Assembly (NCBI GenBank): GCA_024704765.1
Contig: JAKMXF010000006.1
Span: forward strand, 1 to 64,000
Reading direction: 5' to 3'
Length of the DNA: 64,000 bases
Origin: Oopsacas minuta
Lineage: Eukaryota > Animalia > Porifera
A program made the translations under genes and the position numbers. Below the pieces are notes generated by a model. That model was not told where the DNA came from and ran no database searches. It worked only from the letters and a program-made list of their open reading frames with translations. Every line of letters starts with the position of its first letter. The first letter of the stretch is position 1. Below, piece after piece: positions 14,704 through 48,739 of the stretch.

Positions 14704-15790
14704 GGTTATTTATCCTGTTGTACATTACTTCGAATATTTGGGTATAGGACTAAAGGTGTGTATATCAATTAGCCTGAGCCCATCATATACATTCGAAGAG
14801 CTACCATCTCATTTGGATAATAACAAGAAATTTCTTCATGGTAGGGATCCTGTAATTCCAGTGTAACCACATCAGAAATGGGACCAGTCAGCTTTATATG
14901 ACCCGCGCGACCGATCGTCCGATCAATCTGAAGCAACTGTAAATCTATAATCTATACTATGAAAACGCAATTAATCTCTATGTACGTGTGTGTATATGTA
15001 TATATGTTGTTGTTCGGAATTGATTGAAGAAGCTGGAAGACTCTTACGGCTGAATTTGGGCATACAGGGGTATTTTGGGCCTGGCTCAGACATATTTGAG
15101 TCTTGGACGAAAATTCACACCTATGACAAAATTATGACGTCATTGTCATCTTTGTTTAGAAATCGAAAAATCACATTATTAACCACTGCTCAGCCAATAT
15201 ACATAATATTAGTTTGAAATTTGAATCACAAGTCAACCTGTAGTCAGACCCGGCCAGCCGGCCAACACTGACCGGTTCCATCTCTGGACCTTATATAATT
15301 AGACTGGCAGCATATGAATGAAGAATTTCCACACAGGATTTTCAAATGCAAATTGCCAAATGCTAAATATTTCCATTACAATCCAGATATGGATGGAAAT
15401 GGAGTTCTCCAATTACTAATGCAACATCGATTTTCCTCAGTAAGGCAGATGCTGAACACATCAATGTTTACATCCGTATACGTACACTATAGGAATATAA
15501 GCGATTGAATAAACAGCGAGTTATTTTCATTGGCATCCTCAAAATTAACTGATTTAACTCGGGTTCATAACTTGGGTCCTGGAACGATCTATTCAGAGTG
15601 ACTCCGGTACTAACCCAGGCATTTGTGTCTTGAGCTCGAAATTTGTATCATATATTTCTATTTCCATATTGGTACGCACATATTCATTCTCGATTGTCTA
15701 AGACTCAAGGTTATATTTATAGCAAGTACTATTGGTATATTTACATTTTACAATAATTTAGCATGTACTTGTGCCCATCACATACTCAGA

Positions 15791-18700
15791 ATGGCAGATA
15801 AAGGATCTCCCAAACATATACCACTCTTGAGCATACATGATGACGCTTCTCCAAGTCCTGTCTCAACTGTAGGCAAAGCATCGAAATCAGTCCTCTTGTC
15901 CAGATTCTGTCGTTACCATGGAAAAAGTCACAGTGTATTCGATATAAAGAAAGTGAATTCAAACAAAGATGTCTTTACGGAGGATTTATTGTTAGCTTCT
16001 GAAGACCGTAGATCCTCTGAGCCAGATTTAGCTGAATTATCTCTTATACATCTCAAAACAGGAAATACTTTTAAGATAAATAGAAACATGTTGAAATTCA
16101 TAACAATACCTCAACTACCAAACATTTTGTATCAAATCATTGATTCAGGTAGTATTCAAGCGTTAGAATATTTCTTTCGAAACGGGCCAGACTTGAAAAC
16201 ACTGTCCACTACGCACAATTTATTTCCATTGCATTATTCCGCCGAGAGATCGCATTCTGAGATTTTAATTTGGATGCTCGAGAATAAAAGTTTGAAGAAT
16301 TTATCCGAGAAGACAGATTCTAAAGGAAATACATTATTACATGCAGCGTGTATGTCAAATAATTCTGAATGTTTTAAGTGTTGCTTTGAAAAACTCAAAG
16401 AAGTTTCCGTTGATCTTTCCAAAATTATTGACATTCAAAATAATACATTCCAGACACCCTTATACGTTGCTACGCAGAATCAGTTTCAAATGGCAATAGA
16501 GATTCTATTAGAGTCAGGTGCAGACCCAATGATACCAGGACCAGGTGGATTAACGTCTATACATTTAGCTGCACATAATGGTCTTATTCTATTGCTGCAC
16601 ATGTTATTGAGACAAGCAGATTCTAATAGGGATGAATTGAAGAAACTATTTGGTAAAAAAGTCAGTTTAGAGAATGGAGAAGAGTTTAACATTATGCAGA
16701 TGGCAGCACTTGATACTGTATCATTGCTAGTACAATTTGGTGCTGACCCGAATACATCACGGAAAGAATCACAGATTTCTCCTTTAATCCAGGCTGCACG
16801 TGAAGACAACCTTGAGCTTCTACGTGTTCTGCTTCAGTCAGGAGCTAATCCAAACCTACCTGATAGCAATGGTAATACTCCGTTAATGGGTGCTATTACT
16901 ATTGGCAGTGTAGACGGAGTAGCAATGTTATTGGATGCTGGAGCTTCACCTAATCTTCCTAACAAAGCTGGGTTCAATGCTGTTAACCAATGTGCTCAAT
17001 ATGGTCATGTGGATGTGTTAGATTTATTGGTTAGAGCAGGTGGTCTACTCGTGAGTGAGGATATGTTCACTTCTGCACTGCACTCAGCTGCTTTCTGGGA
17101 CGAGGCTGAGATTCTACGTATCATGCTAACCAAGTACAAAGCACCAGTTAATACACTCAGTAAGATAAGCACTCTCCCAGTACATCCCGCTATTCGTAAA
17201 GGACATTCTGCTTGTCTACGAGTATTGATAGATGAGGGTGCTAATATATATTTTAAGAGTCCTCTAACCGGTGATACCTTGCTGCATCTAGCTGTGAGAG
17301 AGAATCAACGAGAAGCAGTACGTCTGTTGGTTAAGGCTCGTATTAATCAGGATGAAATTGATAATGATAATTTAACTCCACTAATGTTAGCTGTACAACT
17401 CAATCGTCATGATTTGATTCCTATTCTATTCGCTGCAGGTGCTAGCTTAGATAAAACTAACTTACAAGGTAACACGTCACTACATATCGCGGCTATTCAC
17501 AGTTCCCTACGATCTGCAAAGTGTATTCTCGATCTGATTCAAACACTACGAGATACGAATACCGATAAATGTTTGTTTGAAGTTAAAAATCTCAAAGGTG
17601 AAACTCCATTCGATATAAGTTTAAACAAACCTAAAGAGACAGTATCACGGTTATTCATAGAATATGGGTCGAGTGAGTATTTCCTAAGATCTCCCAAATC
17701 CCAAGAAGACGACACCAAACGTTCACTAGCCGCAAATTTGCCATTCAACATTTTCCATCGTGTAATGAACAATAATAGATTTAAAACTATGCGAGTTTTG
17801 CAGGAAAAAATGGTTTCATATAGTGACTCGCAAAATGTAACACTGACGTCATCATTTTTGGACATAGATGAATCCGGGTTTTTACCAGATAATGAAAATT
17901 ATAATTTTCGTTCTAAAACTGTGCTTCACAAGCTATTGGATTGCGCTGAGACTGAAGTCAAATATCATCCACTAGTCAACATTGTAGTCAACAAGAAAAT
18001 ATCAATTTATCGGAATTGGTATTTGTTTTCTTTTCTACTATACTTTGTCTATCTTATTTTCTTATCATTCGCGCTTTTTCAAGCTGCAACTCTCTGTGAC
18101 CCTCTCTACTACACTGGAACATTAGATTATTTGCGGCTTTTTTCGGAAATTGTAGTCATATTCTTTGTGATTTCGTTCTTTCTCTCTGAATTAGTGGAAA
18201 TCTGGGTTGATTGGTATAATATTATTCAAGAAAAACGTTTGGAGAGTGATATTGCTGTCAAAACTATCGAATATTCAGGTCAATTCTCATCAGCATTTAC
18301 ATTGCATAAAATACGTGAATTGTTCCAGAAAATTGACCGACGTACATTTTACTTTCCATCAGCTTTTTACTCGTATTTTTCTGATTTCTACAATTTTCTG
18401 GATATTTTTTCTATAATGTTCGTGATATTCGTTTTCATTCTACGTTTATCTGATTCACGAGCTCAATGGGTATTCGCTTCAATAATGTACATCATAAATG
18501 TATTCCGTTTATTCAAATACATTCGCATAATCCCAGCTCTCGGCGCATACTCTGTCATAATTTTCAGGATATTCTTGATTGACATGCCAAAGTTCTTAGC
18601 TGTATTCTTCATTATCTGCCTTGGTTTCTATGGAGGTTCTCTGCTTGCCTTACGCTTTTCACCATATGCACCTATCACAAACAACTGCACATTATCAAAC

Positions 18701-19525
18701 CCAACAACCTCATCTGTAAATTCCACCTGTACAAATATAGATCTTAGATACTTCAATCATACAAACGTATTCCGTGATCTTTTAATTACAGGAGTTTTGT
18801 TGTTAGTAGATGGCGGAGCTAGTGGTCACGAAGCTGATATTAAACTGGATTATAGATGGTATTTTGAAACTGTCTATATTATTTCAGCATTCATTATATC
18901 CGTCGTGCTGAGTAATATTCTAATCGCTCAGCTGACAGACACATATTCACAGATTTCTGTTCAGAATGAATTGCATTATAAACTGGAATTAGCCGTAACC
19001 TTAGAACATTCTTCTAATCTGTTCTTTTTCTGTGGCACAAAGCCTAGGAAATATTGCTCTTTTGAGAAAATTATATTACCCACGCAACAGTGGGAAGATT
19101 TGACAATGCAAAGTTACTCTAAAACAACTGAAGAGTTATTGTATGACGTCACAGAGAATTTATTAGAGTTTCGGCAGGAAGTTGATCAAGATTTGGATAT
19201 TAATCTAAAGTCAAGTTCTGACCTTCATAACAAAGTTGAGAATCTCGAAGAAATGTCTAGTCTTTGCCTCAAAAATATCTCAGAAATTATCACAAATCAA
19301 GAATCTATGCTCGCTAATAACAGTGGGAATGTGAGCACTGTCCCTTCGAAAATTGACGAGGATCTTTCCAGTTTCTTAACTCAATCTCGTTCAATCATGG
19401 ATCAGCAAATGAAATATTTGCAGGATTTGGAAACTCGAATGGAAGAGCGAATTCAGCGTTTAGGCAATCAATTAGATGAACGTTTAAAATCCGTGGATGA
19501 GCGGTTACAAGCACTACAAAAATAA
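15791..19525 (+). CDS. Ankyrin-repeat TRP cation channel (TRPA-like architecture), intronless
   Basis: About 14-16 ankyrin repeats, HPLVNIVVNKK pre-S1, six hydrophobic segments, S6 exit NILIAQLTDTY, C-terminal coiled coil. First ATG 15791. Confidence 0.9.
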   Translation: MADKGSPKHIPLLSIHDDASPSPVSTVGKASKSVLLSRFCRYHGKSHSVFDIKKVNSNKDVFTEDLLLASEDRRSSEPDLAELSLIHLKTGNTFKINRNMLKFITIPQLPNILYQIIDSGSIQALEYFFRNGPDLKTLSTTHNLFPLHYSAERSHSEILIWMLENKSLKNLSEKTDSKGNTLLHAACMSNNSECFKCCFEKLKEVSVDLSKIIDIQNNTFQTPLYVATQNQFQMAIEILLESGADPMIPGPGGLTSIHLAAHNGLILLLHMLLRQADSNRDELKKLFGKKVSLENGEEFNIMQMAALDTVSLLVQFGADPNTSRKESQISPLIQAAREDNLELLRVLLQSGANPNLPDSNGNTPLMGAITIGSVDGVAMLLDAGASPNLPNKAGFNAVNQCAQYGHVDVLDLLVRAGGLLVSEDMFTSALHSAAFWDEAEILRIMLTKYKAPVNTLSKISTLPVHPAIRKGHSACLRVLIDEGANIYFKSPLTGDTLLHLAVRENQREAVRLLVKARINQDEIDNDNLTPLMLAVQLNRHDLIPILFAAGASLDKTNLQGNTSLHIAAIHSSLRSAKCILDLIQTLRDTNTDKCLFEVKNLKGETPFDISLNKPKETVSRLFIEYGSSEYFLRSPKSQEDDTKRSLAANLPFNIFHRVMNNNRFKTMRVLQEKMVSYSDSQNVTLTSSFLDIDESGFLPDNENYNFRSKTVLHKLLDCAETEVKYHPLVNIVVNKKISIYRNWYLFSFLLYFVYLIFLSFALFQAATLCDPLYYTGTLDYLRLFSEIVVIFFVISFFLSELVEIWVDWYNIIQEKRLESDIAVKTIEYSGQFSSAFTLHKIRELFQKIDRRTFYFPSAFYSYFSDFYNFLDIFSIMFVIFVFILRLSDSRAQWVFASIMYIINVFRLFKYIRIIPALGAYSVIIFRIFLIDMPKFLAVFFIICLGFYGGSLLALRFSPYAPITNNCTLSNPTTSSVNSTCTNIDLRYFNHTNVFRDLLITGVLLLVDGGASGHEADIKLDYRWYFETVYIISAFIISVVLSNILIAQLTDTYSQISVQNELHYKLELAVTLEHSSNLFFFCGTKPRKYCSFEKIILPTQQWEDLTMQSYSKTTEELLYDVTENLLEFRQEVDQDLDINLKSSSDLHNKVENLEEMSSLCLKNISEIITNQESMLANNSGNVSTVPSKIDEDLSSFLTQSRSIMDQQMKYLQDLETRMEERIQRLGNQLDERLKSVDERLQALQK

Positions 19526-31012: not shown

Positions 31013-31867
31013 ATGTCAACAACAATAACAACAACAACAACAATAACAACAACACGTGGTAACATTACATTATTTGGAATTCCCATAATGATCCTACCAT
31101 ATTCTATACAGTACGCGATTATATTAATCGGATTTCTAATCTCATTTTCTATTCAAACTCTGATACCAATAGTAACAGATCTAAGACAAGATATTAGTAT
31201 AATTTTCCTATTGCAAGATCTATTTGTATTCATATTCGCTTATATCATGAAGCTAGCACGACCTCCATCACGATCTGATTGTCCAATCTTCTATTATTAT
31301 TTCTTGTCTGTAGCTTATACAATATCCTCTGTATTTGGTTTCATAATAGAAATTGATCCTAAATACTGTTTCCTTGCGAAAATATTTGTGGTTTTCGCCC
31401 TAATATCAGATGCTCAAAATAAATGTATATTTATATTGGTAAGATATATTATACTGCTATGTCTTATAGCAGCTGTATATTATCTTGTTAATGAGATTCC
31501 ATATATATTTGGATTATATGGATTTTCTTTTCTCATTTTCTTGCAAATTCTATTCAAGATTGAAGCGAAATATTCCCCAGTTAACTCTGAGATAATTTCC
31601 TATTTATTCGGTATCTCTTTTGTATTATCTTTTTCTTTTTATATTTTCCAATCGGTTCATAATACAGATTTTCCTAGCCATCTTGGTATATCTGTTTTGA
31701 TTGCTTACGCACTCTCAAATTTGATTTTTGTGAAGATATCTTTCCTATTAACTGGGTTAAAAATATTTGGTTCCAATTCTATCAAATTTTTTATTTTATT
31801 TGAATCTATTCTGTATATATTTATCAAACAAATTGGAACTAATTTTCTAGTTAATTATTTTGATTAA
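31013..31867 (+). CDS. Multi-pass membrane protein, divergent SLC35B (UAA / PAPS-transporter-2-like)
   Basis: About 8-9 hydrophobic segments; ITLFGIP..Q..I...F, KYSPVNSEIISYLFGISF and LLTGLKIFG parallel SLC35B3 motifs as recalled (VVVLG, HNASNSEMVLYSYSIGF, LALIKIFG). Confidence 0.6.
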   Translation: MSTTITTTTTITTTRGNITLFGIPIMILPYSIQYAIILIGFLISFSIQTLIPIVTDLRQDISIIFLLQDLFVFIFAYIMKLARPPSRSDCPIFYYYFLSVAYTISSVFGFIIEIDPKYCFLAKIFVVFALISDAQNKCIFILVRYIILLCLIAAVYYLVNEIPYIFGLYGFSFLIFLQILFKIEAKYSPVNSEIISYLFGISFVLSFSFYIFQSVHNTDFPSHLGISVLIAYALSNLIFVKISFLLTGLKIFGSNSIKFFILFESILYIFIKQIGTNFLVNYFD

Positions 31868-32129: not shown

Positions 32130-35100
32130 ATGAGCGATATTGTCCCGATACTTTCACCAGGGGTTGTACAGGAATACACCTGTCATTGCAGCCGAAAGAG
32201 TAAAATTCTTAAAAGATGGAAGAATGCAAAGATTGCTATCATCAGACAGGTCAATGTGGAACCGCCATTTCGAATTGTAGACAATGAAGATGATGTAGAG
32301 CATCTATTCATGCTCAATCAGGGCGAGAATGATAATGTGTTAGTCGAATTCGTTGATGATGACCCTCATGAACCAGAAAAATTCCTCGGAATCACCGTTA
32401 CTTGCAAACTAGAAAATTCGGTCACCACATTAAAAATGAAAGATATTGCACAACAGAGATGGTTAATGGCTTGTCTAGGTGCAACAGGTCGTGGTCTGTT
32501 CTCTCCTATCCTGGGATTGGAAGAGAGAAAGATTGAAGAACAATGGGAGGGGATCTGGGATATTACCCACGGAATCAACCCATTACAAACAGCTGAGGAT
32601 ATACACCATGCGATTTCACACACGACTTCCAAGATTCCAGATGATAAATGTCCTGATTACACAGAAGGTGACCTGAATGTATACTTGAGGGTACCCACAT
32701 ACAAAGCTCACCAACAGGATAAAGGGATGTTGACTGAACCCTTGAGAATACTACAAGAAGGAATAGCGATTACGAATAGACAACTTCATGATACTTTTCT
32801 GCCACCAATTGGTCCTCCAGTTTACGTTCTTATTAACATTGGATTTGGGTTAGAAGTAGGATTGAAAGCAGGACTACAAGAGCTCTGGGATCCTGTATTA
32901 AAATCTCGAATATTCATTGATCACAATCAACAACAAACTTTCTACCAAGATCCCAGAGAAGCTAAACAACCACCCCTACAATTAGAATGTCGCCAGCTGA
33001 TATATGGACCAGACAGGTTAGATGCAGGAGTGCCACGCGGCGACGAGGCCTGTTCCACTGTAGCATATCACGTGGAGAAAGTTGTTAGCAAGAAGTATAA
33101 ATGGGGAGCATGGATTTTGGCGAAAGGTATCGATGGAGTACACGGTCCGAGTGGACAGTTAGGAATGATAGGGCAAGTTGGTGCGAATGGGGTACATGGT
33201 GCGCATGCAGGAAGAGGAGGACCAGGTGGGCAGGGGGGTCAAGGATACCCAGGGACAAACGCAGGCATAGGTACGAATGGGACCAATGCCTCGGACCTCT
33301 CATTGTACCTATCAGGAGATTCTGAAAATCTAAAAATAGAAGGAACCTTAGAAGATTGCGTGAATTTAGGCGATCAATGTAGCGAGTATATTATGTGTGT
33401 GGATTGTACAGGAGGACATGGTGGGCACGGGGGTCCTGGCGGTCAGGGAGGGAAAGGAGGGACGGGAGGACATGGAGGGCATGGTGGTAGAGGACGCAGA
33501 GGGCACAGCGGAGGCAGTAAGCATAGAGGGGGAAGAGGAGGACGTGGGGGTGATGGTGGACAGGGCGGTCAGGGTGGTGTTGGAGGGATTGGTGGACGAG
33601 GTGGTGACGCAGCAAATTCTGGTAACGGAGGACATTGTGTTATCCACTCGAGTGATCCTAAACTGCTGCATCTAGTTGAAGTAGCAGTGAATGCAGGAGA
33701 ACCTGGTAAGGGGGGACATCCAGGATTTGGAGGGGAAGGTGGAGATGGAGGGAGTGGGGGACATGGAGGGAGTGGGGGGTCGGGAGGTAGTGGACATCCG
33801 AGCGGATCTTCTGGGTTCTCAGGATCAAGGGGTCCGGATGGGATGACTGGATACATTGGGCAAAATGGACCACCTGGCAATAACGGATTTAAGGGACGAG
33901 ATGGAGGATTACTTTTCATACTCCTTAGCACAGATGGCCAGACAGTGATCGAACAATCTGGCTATAGATACCATGTAAAAGTTGATTCCCAATCACTCAA
34001 TATTAGATCTGCAGTAGACGATGGGATATTTGAGCCTAACGAAGAAATCACAGTGGATAAATTTACTCTACAGAACATCGGGCAAATGACTTTACCTGAA
34101 GGGGCACTTGTATCAATGGTATCGACTCCAACTGTAAAATTTCATCCAATAATATTCAAGCTACCCATCCTAGCTCCACAACAAACGATGGAAGTTACTC
34201 AAGAATTTGTAGGTAGAGTATTTGATGTTCCGTCGCCCAATTCCGAGGGTCCGTATTTGGGTGAGGCCTACTTTGAAACAAGAGTTGATCTTCTAGGTCG
34301 GCCATTTGACAGTGCGAAGACAATCCACAGACTTATTGTGCAATACCCTGTTAAGGTAGATAGCATTGTTATACCAGAGAATCTAGGTAGAGGGGAACAA
34401 TCCAGCATTCATGTTACTCTAACAAACATTTCAATGCTCCATTATGGTAACTCCCCTGGATCAGGTGGAGAAATTGCCTTGAAAGTTCATTTCGACAAGA
34501 GAGTGCTGCCATTTGCAATTGTAACAGAAGATTCGAGTTGTCCTTACAGAATACATTATGATCCTAATGTGCCTGATAGTTTCTATGTTGATGTGATTCA
34601 AATACAATCTGCTAGCAAAATTACAGTCACTTTCAATGTTGTTATATCAAATACTGCTGAGTTGTTTGATAGATGTCCAGTACAGGTGGATCTCCTTTTG
34701 AGAGGGAAACTAATAGAGTATCGTCAGCATTTTATTCGTGTTATTCCCTTCTACATTCCTTCACAGCCTCCAGCTGATATCTTATTCATAACTGATAGAT
34801 CTATTTCTAGAAAAGAGTTCGTTCTCTGGCAGAGATTATTCGAATTACTAGGTGCACGAGTGGATTTCTGGGATAGAGATCGATTTGAAGGGTTCTCGTA
34901 CAAAGGTATGACAAGGTTGAGACATGAATTTAGTTGGGTAGGAAGACATAGTGGGTCACTGATTCTATTTCCAAACTCACCGTTTCAATATTTCGATCCA
35001 AATGATGTGGTTGCTCATCTTAAAGATGATAGTAGATTGAGCATTGATTCCAATTCTGTGGCAAATGATTCAGCAGTATTGTTTATAGCTGATTTACAAA

Positions 35101-36026
35101 CAGAAGACCTAGTTATTAATGAGGTGAAGAAATTTATACAATGCGTTTGTCTACAGGTCCCGAAAACTACGCTGGGAGGGGCGGATTTCGGAGGAAACCA
35201 CCTGTTCAGTCCGGACGCTGATGATTTCAAAGAGAGACAGAATGAGATTGTCAAAAACTTTGAGACGGAGCCGCCGGTCAACCGTTTCTACATTTCAAAT
35301 GTTGATTTTAAACCACAACGACTTAAATTTGTTACATTCTCTTATGGGTCCCTTGATATACAGAGACTCCCTATTGACCCTACAGCCAAATTTATGATTG
35401 TTACAAGACCAGTGAATCGGTTTACATTAGACGATCCCCACTTCAGTGTCGGGCAAAACGAAATCCCTCTAGGATGTAACTGGGGGCAAACATTACTATA
35501 TGTTCTCCATGGACTCCCGTGTCATTTAAAGTTTTCAATTTTACAAGGAAATCGTGATGAAGAGATCTCTATAAAATTTGTGACACCTTCAGGTACGATC
35601 TTGGAACTTATAGAGTTAGTACATTTATCAATAACGAAGGAGATAATCGCAGAAGTCAGCTGTTTGTCGTTAAACCTGCCGAAACTAGCTGCACTCACTA
35701 CTCGTATTCTTGGTGAGTTGGATACTTTTATCAGAAACTCTATTCATATCTTCCCGATAATCACTGCTGTCAAAGTATACGCGAAAGACAATATCCCGAA
35801 AAAACAAAAAGACGTGAAACAGAAAGTTCTGGAATATTGTAGACAGATAAAAGACAGACTTATCGAATTCGGTGGAAAGGAAATTGGAGAACAGTACAAA
35901 AGATCAATGAGTTTCTCTGAAGATAAGAAACGAATATATTTCGAGAACCTTGTCAATAGTGGACACACATTTGAGCCTCATGTATACAATCTCAGCAAAT
36001 TGAACAATGAACTGAATCGCATATAG
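32130..36026 (+). CDS. 1298-aa uncharacterised protein: PH-like, WW-like, interrupted Gly-rich (GxxG/GGx) region, beta-sandwich, alpha/beta domain
   Basis: Single 3.9-kb ORF. SKILKRWK..QQRWLMACL (PH-like); LQELWDPVLKSRIFIDHNQQQTFYQDPR (WW-like, 32862-32957); Gly repeats about 33126-33905; DDGIFEPNE. Confidence applies to the CDS; domain calls are by eye. Confidence 0.88.
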   Translation: MSDIVPILSPGVVQEYTCHCSRKSKILKRWKNAKIAIIRQVNVEPPFRIVDNEDDVEHLFMLNQGENDNVLVEFVDDDPHEPEKFLGITVTCKLENSVTTLKMKDIAQQRWLMACLGATGRGLFSPILGLEERKIEEQWEGIWDITHGINPLQTAEDIHHAISHTTSKIPDDKCPDYTEGDLNVYLRVPTYKAHQQDKGMLTEPLRILQEGIAITNRQLHDTFLPPIGPPVYVLINIGFGLEVGLKAGLQELWDPVLKSRIFIDHNQQQTFYQDPREAKQPPLQLECRQLIYGPDRLDAGVPRGDEACSTVAYHVEKVVSKKYKWGAWILAKGIDGVHGPSGQLGMIGQVGANGVHGAHAGRGGPGGQGGQGYPGTNAGIGTNGTNASDLSLYLSGDSENLKIEGTLEDCVNLGDQCSEYIMCVDCTGGHGGHGGPGGQGGKGGTGGHGGHGGRGRRGHSGGSKHRGGRGGRGGDGGQGGQGGVGGIGGRGGDAANSGNGGHCVIHSSDPKLLHLVEVAVNAGEPGKGGHPGFGGEGGDGGSGGHGGSGGSGGSGHPSGSSGFSGSRGPDGMTGYIGQNGPPGNNGFKGRDGGLLFILLSTDGQTVIEQSGYRYHVKVDSQSLNIRSAVDDGIFEPNEEITVDKFTLQNIGQMTLPEGALVSMVSTPTVKFHPIIFKLPILAPQQTMEVTQEFVGRVFDVPSPNSEGPYLGEAYFETRVDLLGRPFDSAKTIHRLIVQYPVKVDSIVIPENLGRGEQSSIHVTLTNISMLHYGNSPGSGGEIALKVHFDKRVLPFAIVTEDSSCPYRIHYDPNVPDSFYVDVIQIQSASKITVTFNVVISNTAELFDRCPVQVDLLLRGKLIEYRQHFIRVIPFYIPSQPPADILFITDRSISRKEFVLWQRLFELLGARVDFWDRDRFEGFSYKGMTRLRHEFSWVGRHSGSLILFPNSPFQYFDPNDVVAHLKDDSRLSIDSNSVANDSAVLFIADLQTEDLVINEVKKFIQCVCLQVPKTTLGGADFGGNHLFSPDADDFKERQNEIVKNFETEPPVNRFYISNVDFKPQRLKFVTFSYGSLDIQRLPIDPTAKFMIVTRPVNRFTLDDPHFSVGQNEIPLGCNWGQTLLYVLHGLPCHLKFSILQGNRDEEISIKFVTPSGTILELIELVHLSITKEIIAEVSCLSLNLPKLAALTTRILGELDTFIRNSIHIFPIITAVKVYAKDNIPKKQKDVKQKVLEYCRQIKDRLIEFGGKEIGEQYKRSMSFSEDKKRIYFENLVNSGHTFEPHVYNLSKLNNELNRI

Positions 36027-37912: not shown

Positions 37913-39244
37913 TTACCAATTAATCTTAGACCTCAGAAGGTAAGACCCATTTTCTTCTGATGACCAAATCATCTCCCAAATAGTATTACGAGTACACTCA
38001 CAATCAACGCCGTATAAATTACAACCTTGCCAGGCGTTACCAGATCCCTCAAAAATAGTAGGAACCTTCCTACCTATATTCGTGCTAGACTGAAAAGTTT
38101 TGTAAGACACACAAGAATCTCCTCTACATTCACACCAGAATGCATCTCTATAATGACAATCTTCCTTAACTTGACAGCCATAAGGGGCTATAATACATTC
38201 GTATTGAGGATAAGCATCAGTACTTGTCTCACTATGGTTAAACTTCTGTAACTCAACGTTAGTAGCACTCACAAGGTAATCACAGCCGAAATTAAGATAT
38301 CCCTCGTAGTAAGCTTGTAGATTAATTGCCTTAGCGTAATGCTCTGTATTATAATATTTGCTTTGCAAAAGTTCCCAGATTGGCATGAATTTGTATTGGA
38401 TTGGTGAATGAGTAGAGTTAGCTTCTTCGAAGAATTTCTTGGTTAGTTCTAAAGAGTGGTTGACGTAGAGAGCTGATCTTGTAGCTAGCGTACCTCCTCT
38501 TAATACGAGGCGAGAAGAGATAGACAGACTAGATACGGATGAATTATCTTCTTTTGTAACTCCAGAACAAATATCCAACCCAATACTCCCTCGTGGAATT
38601 GATCCTGCAAAATCTAAACAAGCTTTAATACCATATTGTTTGGCAGTATAACTATTACTTGCATCTGAAAAGCAATGCTGATATATTCCCGAACCATATT
38701 TCACATCAGTTACAATATGAGAGTTATATGTATCAAGGAATAACTGGTAGGGTGTCCATTCCGATTTCAACCAAGGTTTCTCGATGGTTGTAGGTAATTT
38801 CTCAAACGCCTCGACCAGTGAAACGTCAAGAGCTTGATTGTGCAAACATTTATGATCCATAGAAGCCTTAGAACTTTGTGAATATGCGCTGTAAGTAGAA
38901 CCACGTACCTTATTAGAACTACCACTAATACTATTAGTTATGAACCCCAGTGTAAACCCCATAGTAAAGTCTACCTCTAATTTGAGAGATATGGATGTAT
39001 CACTTGCAATGGAATGATAGAAAGACTTTGTATTCTCATAGAAACTAGAGTCACCTTGTATTATATCAACATCAGGGAGGGAGAGTATGCACTGGGGAGG
39101 TAGGTCTTTGAATACGGGGTATCCTCCAACTAGGTCATCATCCAGGAGACCGACTTTAGGCACGTAGAAGCTGGTACCGATCGGTGAGGTATCTGGCATA
39201 GCTCCCTCCAATAAGAAGATAATTGGAATGAGAATCAATAGCAT
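37913..39244 (-). CDS. Secreted MACPF pore-forming protein of the sea-anemone PsTX-60/AvTX-60 (DELTA-alicitoxin/thalatoxin) type
   Basis: Signal peptide; SFYENTKSFYHSIAS, KPWLKSEW..Y..FLDTYNSHIV, KAC..FAG, LVLRGG, SPIQYKF.PIW.LL..KY..TEHYAKAINL..YY.GYL.FGC, GCQ..EDCHYR.AFWCEC. Confidence 0.9.
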   Translation of the reverse strand: MLLILIPIIFLLEGAMPDTSPIGTSFYVPKVGLLDDDLVGGYPVFKDLPPQCILSLPDVDIIQGDSSFYENTKSFYHSIASDTSISLKLEVDFTMGFTLGFITNSISGSSNKVRGSTYSAYSQSSKASMDHKCLHNQALDVSLVEAFEKLPTTIEKPWLKSEWTPYQLFLDTYNSHIVTDVKYGSGIYQHCFSDASNSYTAKQYGIKACLDFAGSIPRGSIGLDICSGVTKEDNSSVSSLSISSRLVLRGGTLATRSALYVNHSLELTKKFFEEANSTHSPIQYKFMPIWELLQSKYYNTEHYAKAINLQAYYEGYLNFGCDYLVSATNVELQKFNHSETSTDAYPQYECIIAPYGCQVKEDCHYRDAFWCECRGDSCVSYKTFQSSTNIGRKVPTIFEGSGNAWQGCNLYGVDCECTRNTIWEMIWSSEENGSYLLRSKINW

Positions 39245-42859: not shown

Positions 42860-45800
42860 TTAACCTGCTGGTTCATCCTTGCCAACTGTCCCGCGATCTT
42901 TATCAGTGTCATAGAGGAATAATTCAGAATCACATTTGGAAGAAGCGAAATACAATGGAAGACACAATGGAATATACAAGAAGATAAAGTATAGGAAGAT
43001 CGTCATAAAAGTAGGAAAAAGGTAGCAATAAATGTTTCGTAATTTATCATAACATACATATCTCATGAAGATCAATTCTTGCCACAAGTCATTGGAAACA
43101 ATCATATAGTGTATCTGGATATCTCCTCTTCAACTCCTCAACTAGTAATATCCGATAGGTGATATCATCAGGGTTTTTAACAGCCTCATGGGTCAGTATA
43201 TTACCTTCTTCATCTGGGATATCTAGACATGAACCTGTTTTTAGAAGTTCTGTAAATGCATAAACATTCAGATGTTGTATAGCATCGTGCATAGCAGTTC
43301 TTTTATGCTTATCTTGAATACAAATTAAGTGTTTTGCACTGCAAGGGGCGTTTTCTTCGTGCTTTCCATCTAATTTTTCACAAGCATTCAGTACGCTGTC
43401 GAGGATCGGTTGATGAATTGTGGATACCTCTGTACATTTTTGACCATCTGAGAATGATGGGATTATTGCAAGATGAAGGGGTGTTCGCTCATTATCATCT
43501 CGGATATACATTGCTCCTATATCAACATCTAAAAGAATGTTTACTACGTCAGAATATTTCCGTTCTATAGCTAGATGTAATGGCGTGTAGCCGTTATGAT
43601 TTTTCAGACGTGTAATAATTCTGTCTGAATCTGAAGAAGGTTCAGGCTCATTTTTCAAAATTGTTTCAATAAGGACCATTCGTTTTACTGAATCTAGAAA
43701 TTCAACTGCTATATGTAGTATTGTTGATTTATCGTCTTTATGTGGATAGAATGGAGATTTTGATTGAAGAAGAAAATTGGTAACTTCGATATTACCATTT
43801 TGTATGGCTAGATGCAGAGCTGTGTCGCCATTCAAGTTTCTTATTGACAGAAAGGTTTGTTGATTGGGGGCATTTTCATGAATAATTTGTACATAAAGTA
43901 AATCTTCTGTTTTAACAGCATAATGTAGCGAGGTTTCACCATTATTGTCTTGGACATAAAGATCTGGTTTGTGTTTCAAGAGAACATTCAAATTATCCAT
44001 TGTTTAGCATGTATACAAGAATGTAACATAGTTTGTCCTGAAGAATTTTTCAAATCTAGTATACTAGAATATTTACTCGTCAATTTGATGGATTGAGAGA
44101 TCCATTCTAAAACGCGATTAATAAATTCACAAGATTTACCTTGGACAATCATAAGTTGTATTAATGTGTTCTTTCTTTCACCATGTGTGTAGTGCAGCTT
44201 TGGAAAATGTTTGAGGAGAGACATTAGGGCATCTGGAGTTTGATCCAAAATACTCAAAATTTCTAAAGAGATGTACATTTGATCAGATTGTCGAATAAGA
44301 TTATGGAGAGATTGATCCAATTTTGAATCTACACTGCTAGTAGTATCGACCTCAATCTCTTCACTACTACCTCCAATCAACGCTGTACTGTTCAAACAAA
44401 ATTCTAGGAGGTCCGTTTCATCGTAATCATTTGAATCGCGTTTCAATTGTTGAATTCCAATAATACATAATGTTAAATCCAAATGTTCCTCTACACAAAT
44501 AGATTGACAAAATTGCCTATCGGTCTCATTGAAAGTATCAGGAAAAGGTTCGGGGGATCCACTATTGTCAACTATCTCTTCGTGTAAACTGTCTGCCATT
44601 GGTTGACTTTCTGATTGTTCACTTGAGAGTGAATCTAAAATAGTTGCTAATCCTCTCGAAATTTCTTGCTTTGTAACATTAGGGTTTAACATAGAAAGAA
44701 GATGAATGATTTGAGGATTGAGGATAGCTTCTCTCTGAAACAAATTCAAATCTCTTCGTAGAATTAAAATTTGTAAATCAGTGAAGAAGTTAAGGGAATA
44801 GAATTTGTTGTGTGCAAAATCTAAAGTGACACTCCAGGTGTTTAGTTTTGCATTTCCCAACTCAATCTCACTTTTAAGTATTGGGATAGCTTCAGCCTGG
44901 CATTTAAATTGCTTAACATAATTAACATACGAAATATGGCCAAGATACTTCAATTTTTCAACCATCAGGCTTATTTCAGTGATATATCCGAAAATTGATG
45001 TGAATAATTTTATATGTTGCGTAGCATTTGATTCTGCTTTTATCAATGCAATTTTACTCTGAAGATCTTTCAAATTTTCCAAGTTATATACCCGACTAAT
45101 AGGTGAATGTTGTATGTAAAGGTGGATATTTCCATCACCACTATTGTTGTCAAGGTTAACCTCAAAATATCCCACTTCGAAGATGTCTGTGAGTTCCTGA
45201 ATTGTACTTTTACCCACTGAACTATGGGCAATTTCTAAATGTTTCCAAATATGGAGCAAGTTAGCAGCTTCATTGAAAGTTTTCAAAAACCTGTCTTTAT
45301 CCACTATTTGATCATTCACTTGATTGAAAAGGTTTATGAATTGATCGTAATTACAATTTGGGCTCATGTCGAATATTAGGGGAGCTAAAGTATTACAGAC
45401 TGAACGCAGGCATGTAATGCGGTTGATATCGAAGTCGGTTACGTCGCAAGATGTTAGTGCTAAATCTACGAAAACTTTCACTTGCTGTGTATCTTTCAAT
45501 GTAGCTCTCGCCCAAAGAATGAAATTTGGGTGATTAAGAAAAGTTTTGAGAAGAGATTCAGCGAAAGAATCGAACTTATTTACTTGTGCAAATATCGTTT
45601 CTAACTCTACTGTAATGATTTCCAAGGTATTCTCTGTTATGAATTGCTCCTTCTGTAGGTTAACTAGTGTATCTAATTGCACAAAGTCTCCTTCTTTACA
45701 GTAATGTACATGTACTTGATAAATTAAGGTAGCTACTTTTGAGGATTCTTGGAGTTGGAAATATTTAAATATCAGTCTAGCAGAGTTATTGATTTCTTCG

Positions 45801-48739
45801 TCAGGATTTCGGAATTTCAATTTCATTATACTAATTGCAGAGGATAGACAGGAAATTTCATGCTTGATTTTATCTTTAGCTTCTCGAAAAATGCTGAAAT
45901 GTTTTTCAACATCACTAAAGAATTTTGCGATTATGCAAAGTTGTCACTGTAACTTCACATTTCAGGTATGCAGGGTACCAAATTTCGTCGTAAACTTCCT
46001 GAATATCAAGGATCTTAGCTTGACTAAAATTGTATTTGCGCAATACTATTCTTTTAAAAATATTCAAAAATACATTAGATTTTCTCAAATGAAAAGACGC
46101 GTTTAGCATTTTTTGAATATGAAGCAAATTTAGATTAGTCGCTAGGATTGAATTTGGGAGAATGCGATAATCAACGGGCAAATTTCCATTGCAGATTTCA
46201 TCTAGTGGCTGCGCCTCAAAATCTATTTTCAAGAAATCTTTTAATTCTTGTGACTCTAAGAGGTGAGTAGAGAAATTGAGGATACAAATGAAATTGAGGA
46301 TTAATTTAGTTTGCTCGTCAAAAAAGTCTAATTTTTCCTTAGAAACTTGAATGACATCTTCAATACTAGCTCGATCGAATTCTGCTTGACGAATTATATT
46401 TCTAGAAGTGAGTGTGTCAAATATAGATAAAAACCTCTCCCTACCTTCGTTAAGATGTCTCAGATTCTTCATTTGAATGTTGACTGCTTTAGAGACTGGA
46501 GAATAATTACGAACTCATCTTCAGCATGTCTCACTTGTTGAGTTATTCCATAGCTATTATATTCAATCCCGTGTAACGAGAATTTAAAGAGTATTTGCCA
46601 TGGCGTCCAAGAGAGAATGTGAGACGTTGGATTCTCCTCAAAAGTATCTTTTTGTTGTTTGTAAATGACATTTAGGATTTCGAGCAGTTCTGCAGTAACA
46701 GGTAGATGTAGAAGATTTGCCAAAATGATTTCCAGGGAGGCGTGGTCTTGTTTCTGACTTAGTAAATCTATGATGCGAAATTTAAAGTAAGAATGTATTT
46801 TTGTTTCGAACTTATGGTTTGTTGATAAATATACGAAAACTTTTAGCTGAATAGTATCACTCAAATCCTGAATTGCCAGTAAGAATTGCTTTTCTACTAC
46901 TTGCTGCCAATTATAAGTGTTTGGAAATTGAAGTGAAAACAATGAATCCCATACATTTATTCGTTGGATAATTATCTCGAAATTTCTTTTATCTCGAATA
47001 TTGAGAAATGAATCAAGTTTTTGAATGAGAATCAAAATTAATTCTGAGGAAGATTTGAAATGTTTTGCATTGACGAAAAATGACTCAGAATCGTTAGTTG
47101 ATAAAATATTCTGCTGAATTTCTTCCAGCATTTGTAATATTTTTACTGTTAATGTTAGGTGTAAAAATACAATATCCGTATTGATGAATTTATCGTCTAA
47201 TTCCCATAGATAGAAAATTGATTCACACATTAGATAGAGGTCTGATTCAGTGATAAATTGCTGATTTTCATGGAGTTTGGAAATCATATATGAGTATATC
47301 TGACACCTCAATTGCATTGGTGTATAGTCACTCGGCCAGGATTTTATTCTATATACAAGAACTGGTAATAAATACTGATAGTTGATAATATTTGAGGAAA
47401 ATTGTTGAAAGTTTTCATTACTTATTGTGATCAATACAATACTGTAGGGTAGAATTGGATCATAATCCCTCAATATTTTTAGAGCCGATTCACAATAGTT
47501 CACATCCTGAAAATTGTAACAACATTTAGTATCGATATTGGCTGGGAAGCCCCAGTATTCATTAGCGAGTATTTCTTGCTGCTTATGGAGTATTACAAAT
47601 CGATTTGAAAATTTAAACATACAATGGTATAATGGTAGAAACGTTATTAAGTGTTTGCTTGAGACATTATGAGAGCCTGTAAAAATAATATTATCAAAAC
47701 ATTCTTGCAAATTTTGAATTGTCTTTTCACTATTTTGAAAGTTTTCAAAGAAGAAAATTTTATTGGCAATTAGATATGCTATACCATGCAAAGTGAATGT
47801 ATTTAATACTTTTTCCAAAAGTTTCTTGTATTCTTCTTCAGGTTTTCTCTTGCGTACCAAAAGTAATGAAAATATCAAAAATCTTAGTGATTTTTCGGGG
47901 GAATTGTCTATCTTTATCTCACTAACTATCCATCGTGTAACAGAGTCAACCTCAGGGTTAATAAAGTCGTCCTTAACTCCCAAATATGTAGAGAAGATAC
48001 CTTGTGATATAGTTTGGAGAGTTAAAACTTGTTCTTCAAAGGTAAAGAATTTTTCTTTAATATATGTATGGTTAGCAAATAAGTGGAATGAAATTTTCCC
48101 TAATTTTATATTACTTAACTTTCCTATTTCATTTGGCAATACCATGGTGTCGTATTTATCAATTATGTTATCTTGTAAGTTTCCCCATCTAATATAGAGG
48201 CAGCGGTTATATTTATCTCCTTGCCCTAGATTTTCTTCTTTACCGTTTAGAAAGTATTTGTAAGAAATCTCAAAGGAGCTTCTTGAATGAAATCTTATGT
48301 TTTCTTGAGGTATAATTACACAACCCTCCAGGAAAATGTAATCTCTCTCTCCATATTTGATTCTCTCGGTTAGTTTCATGCATGTGGTGTCCTCCTTTAA
48401 ATTACCAAATGAAACCCCATTAAACCTCAGCGTTAGATTACCATTGATAGACTTATAATGTTCTAGAAACATGATTGTTTTGAACATTATCTTGAGACTA
48501 GAAGATTGAAACGAAAGACAAATTGTTTCTTCCAAGCATTCCTTGGGTTTCGATATAATTTCGCATTGTGGTTTGGAAATTGGAATTGATACGGCATCTT
48601 CAAACTGTAGGTTTTCTCCACACATTGGGCACACTTTAAATGAATTGGGGGCTCCATTAGGGAAATTATCATTAAATTTACAATGACTAGAGACACATCT
48701 CTTAATAAGCTTCTTTGACTGAATTGGACTGCAATCCAT
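42860..48739 (-). pseudogene. Frameshifted chimera: RNF213-like N-arm, ankyrin repeats, start of a TRP S1
   Basis: RNF213-like motifs (FKVCPMCG, EISYKY, NRCLYI, KVFVDLAL, YNLENLKDLQSKIAL, FYSLNFFTDLQ, YISLEIL); same frame continues into ankyrins (GQTMLH, GETSLHYAV, GDTALHLAI, GYTPLHLAI); frame breaks near 46470, 45915, 44000, 43095. Confidence 0.8.

What the first reader, a model, noticed from the sequence alone, without database searches (positions are those of the whole stretch)
32130..36026. Unusual PH-WW-Gly-rich-beta-sandwich giant, possibly from a patchily distributed non-animal family
Seen: PH-like N-terminus; WW-like module with non-canonical aromatics (first W as L/W, second as Y before QDPR); three Gly-rich blocks (Gxx and GGx) separated by two short beta-type linkers; then RYHV..DDGIFEPNE, QYPV, and DILFITD..KEFVLWQRLFELLGARVDFWD. 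No signal peptide and no introns. Inference from recollection only: the Gly-block/linker/DGIFEPxE/DIL layout matches uncharacterised fungal and protist proteins often mis-annotated as collagen or PE-PGRS. A cytosolic version with added lipid-binding and proline-binding modules would be an undescribed scaffold and an HGT candidate.
Basis: inference. Interest (0 to 1): 0.75.

Follow-up and report, generated by a model that had tools for sequence, protein, structure and literature searches.

The report
Sponge PH–WW glycine-bundle scaffold protein
This is a real, intact glass-sponge gene for a large cytosolic protein that joins a membrane-lipid-binding-type domain and a proline-motif-binding domain to a rigid glycine-helix bundle; it belongs to an old, never-studied family found in sponges, a few worms, amoebae and predatory bacteria, and it is not a recent foreign import.

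Summary

Tools confirm these parts:
- a PH fold (aa 14-119)
- a disordered linker
- a WW domain with a Tyr in place of the second Trp (aa 245-276)
- three glycine blocks stitched by beta-hairpins, predicted with very high confidence as a polyproline-II/polyglycine-II helix bundle, not a collagen triple helix
- two CARDB/Ig-like sandwiches, the first being Pfam DUF7932
- an alpha/beta domain and a helical domain with no known family

The PH-WW form is a genuine animal clade (four more Oopsacas copies, one of them frameshifted; Amphimedon, Owenia, Lineus). Its composition matches the host, and every module is under purifying selection. Relatives carry spliceosomal introns. Recent horizontal transfer is therefore not supported.

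The Gly-bundle/DUF7932 core is much wider, with at least 1019 cluster representatives. These include an amoebozoan protein fused to FYVE fingers and signal-peptide proteins of Bdellovibrionales.

Most likely function (inferred): a phosphoinositide-targeted endomembrane scaffold. No paper describes the family. First-stage notes had flagged paralogues elsewhere in this genome, without follow-up.

The parts
32130..36026 (+). Complete intron-free ORF, 1298 aa, no signal peptide or TM segment
   Evidence: colinear with 25 full-length relatives
32169..32486 (+). PH domain (aa 14-119): seven strands plus C-terminal helix; basic beta1-beta2 stretch (SRKSKILKRWK)
   Evidence: AF2 pLDDT about 75-90. VIA-align Z 11.3 to the Bem3 PH domain and Z 9-10 to dozens of others. 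Foldseek top hits are nearly all PH domains. Pfam PH scores above cut-off in relative P0107.
32502..32825 (+). Disordered linker (aa 125-232). It holds the family's conserved [PL]PxY position, which is degenerate here (CPDY, aa 174-177).
   Evidence: pLDDT 29-49. [PL]PxY at the aligned column in 17 of 26 relatives; Tyr in 25 of 26.
32862..32957 (+). Atypical class-I-like WW domain (aa 245-276): W253, F262, D264-H265, T269, Y271 (in place of the second Trp), D274-P275-R276
   Evidence: An 8-sequence family profile hits 55 WW-domain sequences among 57 PDB matches, best Su(dx) at E 6e-8. Three strands at aa 249-271 in the model. D264, H265 and R276 are invariant in both alignments; D274 and P275 are invariant in A1 and at least 90% conserved in A3.
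33105..33272 (+). Glycine block 1 (aa 326-381), mostly G-x-x
   Evidence: Invariant Gly every third residue; pLDDT 89-97 with no DSSP helix or strand
33273..33410 (+). Beta-hairpin linker 1 (aa 382-427)
   Evidence: Strands 390-396, 401-405, 409-411 and 421-425; conserved S388, D389, L401, L413-G414, C426
33411..33632 (+). Glycine block 2 (aa 428-501), G-G-x
   Evidence: Invariant GG pairs; pLDDT 82-98
33633..33695 (+). Beta linker 2 (aa 502-522)
   Evidence: Strands 502-507 and 516-519; conserved C503, L512, L515, V516
33696..33905 (+). Glycine block 3 (aa 523-592), G-G-x then G-x-x. With blocks 1-2 it is predicted to form one PPII/PGII helix bundle.
   Evidence: VIA-align to 7jjv_B (nine-PPII-helix springtail antifreeze protein): Z 9.5, rmsd 2.0 A, 87 residues, model range 344-578. 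Pro is only 4% of aa 326-592.
33963..34349 (+). Beta-sandwich 1 = Pfam DUF7932 (aa 612-740), CARDB/Ig-like, with the invariant E-P-N-E motif
   Evidence: PF25560 E 2.8e-12, 47.6 bits against a cut-off of 27. Fold Z about 10-11, e.g. ILRUN Fw domain Z 10.9.
34350..34757 (+). Beta-sandwich 2 (aa 741-876), Ig/pilin/MG-domain-like
   Evidence: VIA-align Z 11-12 to pilin, CLIPPER, macroglobulin and cohesin-type sandwiches; pLDDT above 90
34779..35402 (+). Alpha/beta domain (aa 884-1091) with a conserved T..R.E...W......DxWD start; fold family unassigned
   Evidence: Alternating beta/alpha elements, pLDDT 75-93. No PDB or Pfam relative by sequence or profile. Atlas leads only, all below 0.9.
35478..36023 (+). 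C-terminal helical domain (aa 1117-1298); no known family
   Evidence: Long helices, pLDDT 84-96; no Pfam or PDB match

Best explanation
**Shown.** This is an intact nuclear gene of a glass sponge; the assembly matches Oopsacas minuta. It encodes a cytosolic multidomain protein of the uncharacterised DUF7932 family.

Its layout, from N to C terminus:
- a PH domain
- a disordered linker carrying the family's PPxY position
- an atypical WW domain
- a compact polyproline-II/polyglycine-II helix bundle made from three glycine blocks clamped by beta-hairpins
- two CARDB/Ig-like sandwiches
- an alpha/beta domain
- a helical domain

The Gly-bundle-to-alpha/beta core is ancient and widespread. The PH-linker-WW head was added in one clade that holds all named animal members (sponges, an annelid, a nemertean).

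**Inferred mechanism.**
- The PH domain docks the protein on a phosphoinositide-bearing endomembrane. In the amoebozoan relatives, three FYVE fingers take this role.
- The WW domain and the PPxY motif link copies to each other, or to PPxY/WW partners such as Nedd4-type ligases.
- The rigid Gly-bundle/sandwich/alpha-beta body is the conserved working unit, either a binding platform or a lattice element.

Overall it would be an endosome- or phagosome-associated scaffold or adaptor, not an enzyme or a matrix collagen.
For: **Gene reality and constraint.** A single 1298-codon ORF. dN/dS is 0.13 against the 78%-identical paralogue, and 0.07-0.18 in every module.

**Host origin.** The assembly is 61.46 Mb in 365 contigs, as published for O. 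minuta. GC3 matches the neighbours. Flanking genes are ordinary animal genes.

**Domains.**
- PH fold: Z 11.3.
- WW: profile hits at E 6e-8 and almost only WW domains.
- Gly region: pLDDT mostly above 90 (block means 82-98), matching a nine-helix PPII bundle at Z 9.5, rmsd 2.0 A.
- DUF7932: above the Pfam cut-off.
- Two Ig-like sandwiches: Z 11-12.

**Family-wide conservation.** All modules are conserved at 33-37% identity.

**Independent fusions of the same core to lipid-binding modules.**
- A Pfam PH domain plus a SAM domain in P0107.
- Three FYVE fingers in Paradermamoeba P0114 and in P0130.

**PPxY.** [PL]PxY sits at a fixed linker column in 17 of 26 relatives, next to a Nedd4-like WW domain.

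**Phylogeny.** PH-WW proteins form one clade (SH-aLRT 97). A clade of 24 rows (21 with signal peptides) is separated from it with support 100.
Against: - No experiment bears on function. Lipid binding by the PH domain and ligand binding by the WW domain are inferred from fold and motif only.
- The WW domain lacks the second Trp (Tyr here, Phe in most relatives), and this copy's linker motif is degenerate (CPDY). WW-PPxY coupling may therefore be weak or lost in this paralogue.
- The alpha/beta and helical domains make up a third of the protein and have no fold assignment. A catalytic role cannot be excluded, because the animal clade has invariant His, Asp and Glu residues there.
- The Gly-bundle structure is a prediction from 40 related sequences, not a solved structure.
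- Expression of this copy was not tested.
Confidence: 0.55

Rival explanations
1. Recent horizontal gene transfer: the sponge acquired a fungal, protist or bacterial gene that later gained PH and WW modules.
For: - The core is shared with Bdellovibrionales proteins and protist proteins.
- The distribution among named animals is patchy: only sponges, Owenia and Lineus.
- The Oopsacas copy has no intron.
Against: - GC3 is 0.34, the same as neighbouring host ORFs. The GC bump comes only from glycine codons.
- The genome has five diverged copies with dS about 1.
- The PH-WW proteins form one clade with all named animals (SH-aLRT 97), apart from the signal-peptide clade (support 100).
- Demosponge-type genes carry a GT-AG intron inside the PH domain, and the Lineus gene spans 10 kb.
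- Other long genes in this window are also single ORFs.
- An ancient exchange of the core between bacteria and eukaryotes stays open, but that is a different claim.
Confidence: 0.06
2. A secreted collagen-like or PE-PGRS-like structural or matrix protein, as the automatic name of the Amphimedon relative implies.
For: - Period-3 glycine over about 270 residues.
- Weak Pfam Collagen hits in 11 of 43 relatives.
- NCBI's name for the Amphimedon protein is 'collagen alpha-1(XXVII)-like'.
Against: - There is no signal peptide or TM segment.
- PH and WW are intracellular modules.
- Pro is only 4% of the Gly region, and the longest uninterrupted period-3 run is 12 triplets.
- Pfam Collagen does not hit this protein.
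- AlphaFold packs the blocks into one intramolecular PPII bundle at pLDDT mostly above 90.
- There is no PE domain.
Confidence: 0.04
3. An enzyme: the unassigned alpha/beta domain is catalytic (hydrolase- or amidotransferase-like), and the bundle and sandwiches position a substrate at a membrane.
For: - The animal clade has invariant polar residues in this region: H932, H963, H1024, E1045 and D1101-D1102.
- The Atlas feature search on aa 878-1100 lists GATase1-like and related families as leads, scores 0.83-0.89.
Against: - Those residues are not kept in the bacterial members. Across 43 diverse members, only W914 and D915 in this region are near-invariant.
- There is no Pfam or PDB sequence or profile match to any enzyme family.
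- Atlas scores below 0.9 are explicitly chance-prone, and only 1 of the 10 best hits shares a clan.
Confidence: 0.15
4. A cytosolic or phagosomal recognition factor: the flat Gly-bundle surface binds a repetitive microbial or particulate ligand (as phage S16 gp38, PE_PGRS33 and ALK use such bundles for binding). The PH or FYVE domain brings it to phagosomes of bacterivorous cells.
For: - The eukaryotes that carry the family are phagotrophs: sponges and amoebae. It is fused to FYVE in amoebae.
- Several paralogues exist per sponge genome.
- Known Gly-rich PPII bundles act as binding surfaces (PMC13243192).
- The bacterial relatives are secreted proteins of predatory Bdellovibrionales.
Against: - The non-glycine positions of the bundle vary among relatives while the glycines are invariant. 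This fits a structural brick better than a specific binding face.
- No ligand, expression or localisation data exist.
- This rival overlaps the main explanation and does not exclude it.
Confidence: 0.15

Closest known systems
Pfam DUF7932 (PF25560) proteins
   Same: The first beta-sandwich scores above the curated cut-off. All 43 diverse relatives scanned carry it.
   Different: The Pfam entry covers only about 130 residues of a conserved core of about 1000 residues. No function, structure or paper is attached to it.
Glycine-rich PPII/PGII helix bundles: springtail and snow-flea antifreeze proteins (7jjv, 3BOG), phage S16 gp38, the ALK/LTK glycine-rich domain, predicted PE_PGRS domains
   Same: G-G-x and G-x-x repeats are predicted to pack as antiparallel PPII helices. 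The model superposes on 7jjv at Z 9.5, rmsd 2.0 A. The literature list of such bundles is in PMC13243192.
   Different: - Those are secreted or extracellular. This one is cytosolic, much larger (about 270 residues in three blocks), clamped by conserved beta-hairpins and embedded in a multidomain protein.
- No sequence homology to them was shown.
- The ALK-type TNF-like frame was not seen, but it was not specifically tested.
WW-plus-lipid-binding scaffolds (KIBRA WW-WW-C2; PLEKHA5/7 WW-WW-PH; ARHGAP9/12/27 WW-PH-GAP) and Nedd4-family WW domains (architectures from my own knowledge)
   Same: A class-I-like WW domain, closest by profile to Su(dx), YAP1, KIBRA, WWP1 and NEDD4L, is combined with a membrane-targeting domain. 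A PPxY motif lies in the same chain.
   Different: The order is PH then WW. The second Trp is replaced by Tyr or Phe. The rest of the protein (bundle, sandwiches, alpha/beta, helical) has no counterpart in those scaffolds.
Fibrillar and non-fibrillar collagens
   Same: Period-3 glycine; automatic annotation of a relative as collagen.
   Different: There is no signal peptide, Pro is 4%, the runs are short and interrupted, and the Pfam Collagen model does not hit. The prediction is an intramolecular bundle, not a triple helix.

Membership tests
DUF7932 (PF25560) | Match to the family HMM above the curated gathering score | tested here: met
   47.6 bits against a cut-off of 27, E 2.8e-12, aa 624-739
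PH domain superfamily | Seven-stranded beta-sandwich capped by a C-terminal helix | tested here: met
   AF2 strands 16-102 plus helix 106-115. VIA Z 11.3, rmsd 2.1 A, 88 aa to Bem3 PH; more than 40 PH domains at Z 8.7-10.4.
PH domain superfamily | Match of this protein to the Pfam PH HMM (PF00169) | tested here: not met
   No hit for this copy even at E up to 10. Relatives do hit: P0107 39.8 bits (over the cut-off), Owenia 23.2 bits (just under).
PH domain superfamily | Phosphoinositide binding through basic beta1-beta2 residues | not testable with these tools
   A basic stretch is present here and in the upstream exon of demosponge-type relatives (GYLRRRTSILKRWK-type). Binding itself was not measured.
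WW domain | Sequence-profile homology to solved WW domains | tested here: met
   The family profile (A4) hits 55 WW-domain sequences among 57 PDB matches, best E 6.1e-8.
WW domain | Two signature tryptophans 20-22 residues apart | tested here: not met
   The first is present (W253, at least 90% conserved). The second is Tyr271 here and Phe or Tyr in relatives.
WW domain | Conserved aromatic-x-[DN]-H in strand 2 and an invariant Pro after strand 3; three-stranded sheet | tested here: met
   F262, D264, H265 and P275 are conserved (D264 and H265 invariant in both alignments; P275 invariant in A1, at least 90% in A3). Strands 249-254, 259-264 and 269-271.
Gly-rich PPII/PGII helix bundle | G-G-x or G-x-x repeats packing as a bundle of PPII helices | tested here: met
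   This rests on a predicted model only: pLDDT mostly above 90, no DSSP helix or strand, and Z 9.5, rmsd 2.0 A to 7jjv_B. It needs experimental confirmation.
Collagen | Long uninterrupted Gly-X-Y with a high imino-acid content, secretion signal, trimerisation | tested here: not met
   Pro 4%, longest run 12 triplets, no signal peptide, no Pfam Collagen hit
PE-PGRS | N-terminal PE domain followed by PGRS repeats | tested here: not met
   No PE domain in Pfam scans; the N-terminus is a PH fold
ALK/LTK glycine-rich (TNFL-GlyR) domain | PGII helices inserted in a TNF-like beta-sandwich | tested here: inconclusive
   It is not among the 50 rows listed, but PH domains filled the list, so the Gly region was barely tested.
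Class I glutamine-amidotransferase-like fold (for the alpha/beta domain) | Fold match, or profile match, to GATase1-like families | tested here: inconclusive
   There are only Atlas feature leads at 0.83-0.89. No Pfam or PDB profile hit was found.

The most novel reading that the evidence does not exclude
The Gly-bundle/sandwich/alpha-beta body is an unrecognised kind of rigid building block. In phagotrophic eukaryotes (sponges, amoebae, some worms) it is recruited by PH or FYVE domains to phosphoinositide-marked endosomes or phagosomes. There it self-assembles through WW-PPxY links into a coat or recognition layer. The same block is used outside the cell by predatory Bdellovibrionales, implying an old exchange between predators and phagocytes.
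Probability: 0.15. Interest if true: 0.8.

Novelty: new variant of a known kind. Interest (0 to 1): 0.55.

Why it matters
- **Rare cytosolic example.** Glycine-rich PPII-helix bundles are known from only a handful of mostly extracellular proteins: antifreeze proteins, a phage adhesin and the ALK/LTK receptors. This would be a large bundle in a cytosolic protein.
- **Large, unstudied family.** The family has at least 1019 cluster representatives and no literature.
- **A testable lead on location.** The same conserved core has been joined independently to PH, FYVE and SAM modules. This points to the endomembranes of phagotrophic cells as where an unstudied protein machine works.
- **Annotation.** The work corrects 'collagen-like' names. 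It also shows that an intron-free, patchily distributed sponge gene need not be a foreign import.

Tried and rejected
1. **Second 1300-aa ORF as paralogue.** The ORF at 15623-19525 is not a paralogue. It is an ankyrin/ion-transport (TRP-like) protein.
2. **Sequence-only assignment of the C-terminal third.** Pfam at E up to 10, a PDB profile search and a Pfam tally over 43 members all found nothing.
3. **Fold search for the alpha/beta and helical domains.** Both whole-model searches were filled by the beta-sandwiches, so those parts were effectively untested.
4. **TIR-like idea for the alpha/beta domain.** It came from its D-I-L-F-I-T start. It has no support. I could not build a reference, because the six-frame search found no PF01582 match in this genome.
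5. **GATase1-like test by profile-profile comparison.** I abandoned it because the Bdellovibrionales genomes gave no usable reference.
6. **Names for the metagenome-derived relatives.** Cluster look-ups gave names for very few. A word search with the C-half profile only re-found sponge-type proteins.
7. **Literature searches.** Searches for DUF7932 and for the domain combination found no paper describing the family.
8. **Exons kept apart.** The upstream PH exon and the main exon of the demosponge-type genes were examined separately by reference.

Full report
**The observation**

Window 32130-36026(+) is one ATG-to-stop ORF of 1298 codons. Given the window's base composition, a stop-free run of that length has a chance of about 3e-42. 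There is no hydrophobic N-terminus or TM segment; the maximum 19-mer hydropathy is 1.45. Glycine is 37% and proline 4% of aa 326-592. That region is arranged as three blocks (326-381, 428-501, 523-592) separated by two non-glycine linkers.

**Whose DNA this is**

The assembly holding the window has 61,460,524 bases in 365 contigs. This matches the published Oopsacas minuta genome: 365 scaffolds, about 61 Mb, GC 36% (PMC10280926). The best named protein hits are O. minuta LOD99_7720 (80%) and LOD99_14153 (53%). These correspond to paralogues on contigs C310 (78%) and C33 (52%) of the same assembly. In all there are five copies:
- this one, on C6
- C310
- C188 (76%, split over three frames by two frameshifts)
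- C33
- a divergent C44 copy (34%)

Surrounding genes are ordinary animal genes: a sulfotransferase, DcpS, NHL-repeat proteins, an ankyrin/ion-channel protein and a MACPF protein. Several are also long single ORFs.

**Domain anatomy, N-terminal half**

AlphaFold2 on aa 1-620 with a 40-sequence alignment gave mean pLDDT 78.5.
- **PH domain.** Residues 16-115 form seven strands and a C-terminal helix. The wide structural search returned PH domains almost exclusively: Bem3 PH at Z 11.3, rmsd 2.1 A over 88 residues, and DAPP1, APPL, AKT and TAPP1 at Z about 10. Foldseek agreed. The Pfam PH model does not hit this copy. It does hit relative P0107 above the cut-off, and the Owenia protein just below it.
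- **Linker.** Residues 125-232 are predicted disordered.
- **WW domain.** Residues 249-271 form a three-stranded sheet. A profile built from only eight family members over aa 233-300 hit 57 PDB sequences, 55 of them WW domains. The best were Su(dx) 6e-8, YAP1 1e-7, KIBRA, WWP1, NEDD4L, ITCH and MAGI2. So the WW call is homology, not just resemblance.
- **Linker motif.** At one aligned column of the linker, 17 of 26 relatives have [PL]PxY and 25 of 26 keep the Tyr. This copy has the degenerate CPDY.

**The glycine region**

The three blocks are predicted at pLDDT mostly above 90 (ten-residue block means 82-98), with no DSSP helix or strand. The two linkers form short beta-hairpins. The region superposes on the nine-PPII-helix springtail antifreeze protein 7jjv_B at Z 9.5, rmsd 2.0 A, 87 residues, model range 344-578. 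The glycines are invariant across relatives at 33-37% identity, whereas the x positions vary.

- the low proline content
- the short interrupted runs
- the absence of a signal peptide
- the absence of a Pfam Collagen hit for this copy

This is a prediction, not a solved structure. Known bundles of this type are few: snow-flea antifreeze protein, S16 gp38, ALK/LTK, and predicted PE_PGRS domains (PMC13243192).

**Domain anatomy, C-terminal half**

AlphaFold2 on aa 600-1298 gave mean pLDDT 87.2.
- **Two beta-sandwiches.** Model residues 16-139 and 140-275 match Ig-like, pilin, macroglobulin and cohesin domains at Z 10-12. The first is Pfam DUF7932, and it also resembles the ILRUN Fw domain at Z 10.9.
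- **An alternating beta/alpha domain** at model residues 285-492.
- **A helical domain** at model residues 518-699.

These last two parts have no Pfam hit even at E 10. They have no PDB relative by family profile, and no recurring weak hit across 43 diverse members. The fold searches were saturated by the sandwiches, so their fold class remains untested. Atlas feature leads (GATase1-like and others, 0.83-0.89) are below the level at which that tool is reliable.

**Family size and spread**

An exhaustive profile search used the Gly-free C-half (aa 612-1298, sponge and bacterial rows). It found 1019 cluster representatives at E <= 1e-3, 684 at 1e-10 and 251 at 1e-30. Named or context-identified members are:
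- Oopsacas and Amphimedon, the latter mis-named 'collagen alpha-1(XXVII)-like'
- Lineus longissimus x2 and Owenia fusiformis, called 'PH domain-containing protein' by UniRef
- a Paradermamoeba levis transcript
- a compact protist-like contig with kinase, ankyrin, cofilin and hSac2 neighbours
- an animal-like contig with cadherins, carrying a core-only form
- Bdellovibrionales/Bdellovibrionaceae MAGs, whose roughly 1000-aa proteins start with a signal peptide

Fungi are indicated only by an Atlas cluster label. Architectures vary at the ends while the core stays the same. P0107 has a Pfam PH domain, the core, then a SAM domain. The Paradermamoeba protein P0114 and P0130 have the core followed by three FYVE fingers. 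P0110 has a PH-like start and a WW domain but no Gly region.

**History**

I built a maximum-likelihood tree of 63 members on the two sandwiches plus the start of the alpha/beta domain.
- A clade of 24 rows (21 with signal peptides) is separated from a 39-row clade almost free of signal peptides, with support 100 on both sides.
- All PH-WW proteins form one clade (SH-aLRT 97) that contains every named animal.
- Amphimedon falls inside the '35% identity' group, which marks those metagenome contigs as demosponge-like.
- The Oopsacas copies fall in at least two old lineages.

GC3 of this ORF is 0.34, against 0.21-0.38 for eight other ORFs in the window. The local GC rise comes from glycine codons. 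Against the C310 paralogue, dS is about 1 and dN/dS is 0.13, with every module between 0.07 and 0.18.

Demosponge-type loci have a short upstream exon encoding a textbook PH beta1-beta2 segment. It ends exactly at a GT donor, and in L009 a T-rich tract and AG precede the main exon. I examined the two exons separately and did not join them. The Lineus gene spans 10.2 kb for 3.9 kb of coding sequence.

These facts argue against recent transfer into the sponge. They fit an old animal gene lost in many lineages. Whether the core moved between bacteria and eukaryotes in deep time cannot be decided without a rooted, taxon-labelled tree.

**Mechanism**

*Shown:* the domain set, its conservation, the cytosolic character, and independent fusions of the core to PH, FYVE and SAM modules.

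*Inferred:*
- PH (or FYVE) targets the protein to phosphoinositide-marked endomembranes.
- The Nedd4-like WW domain and the linker PPxY mediate self-association or coupling to PPxY/WW partners.
- The rigid bundle/sandwich/alpha-beta body is the conserved working unit.

I rate this scaffold reading as the most likely (0.55 for the whole statement; the functional part alone about 0.35). The rivals are an enzymatic alpha/beta domain (0.15), a phagosomal recognition role that overlaps the main reading (0.15), recent HGT (0.06) and a secreted collagen-like protein (0.04).

**Novelty**

The family exists in Pfam only as a 130-residue DUF. No paper in the searchable library mentions DUF7932 or this domain combination. 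First-stage notes of this scan had flagged paralogues elsewhere in the same genome, without follow-up. I class it as a new variant of known kinds (WW/PH membrane scaffolds and Gly-rich PPII bundles) with an unassigned C-terminal third.

Noticed in passing
window 37913-39244 (-): The neighbouring single-ORF gene encodes a 443-aa MACPF/perforin-domain protein (PF01823, E 1.9e-10) with an N-terminal hydrophobic stretch.
   Followed up: no
window 31013-31867 (+): A 284-aa very AT-rich ORF (GC 0.28, GC3 0.21) directly upstream. It has a poly-Thr start and many hydrophobic segments and no Pfam family. It may be a multi-pass membrane protein or a chance ORF.
   Followed up: no
window 15623-19525 (+): A 1300-aa single-ORF ankyrin-repeat plus ion-transport (TRP-like) channel gene. 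It is not related to the finding.
   Followed up: partly
L003 (G000:C188:304944-310958), near L003 4530 and 4900: The 76%-identical paralogue is split over three reading frames by two frameshifts. It is either a young pseudogene or an assembly error.
   Followed up: partly
L010 7073-8284, L011 3848-5104, L012 6962-8242: In all three Bdellovibrionales loci the core gene is followed by a 400-430-aa ORF with no Pfam family. In L010 that ORF starts with a hydrophobic leader and is Cys-rich. Its start overlaps the core gene's end in all three loci, so it may be an operon partner.
   Followed up: partly
L018 7684-10776 and flanks: A core-only family member (1030 aa, no PH or WW, no signal peptide) sits next to cadherin-repeat, 7TM and NHL genes. 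Animals may therefore also keep the short form.
   Followed up: no
G000 (whole assembly): A six-frame search with the Pfam TIR model (PF01582) found no match in this sponge genome.
   Followed up: no
window 43988-45826 (-) and 46469-48739 (-): Two long ORFs (612 and 756 aa) have no Pfam family. The first overlaps the end of an ankyrin-repeat ORF (43089-44000).
   Followed up: no
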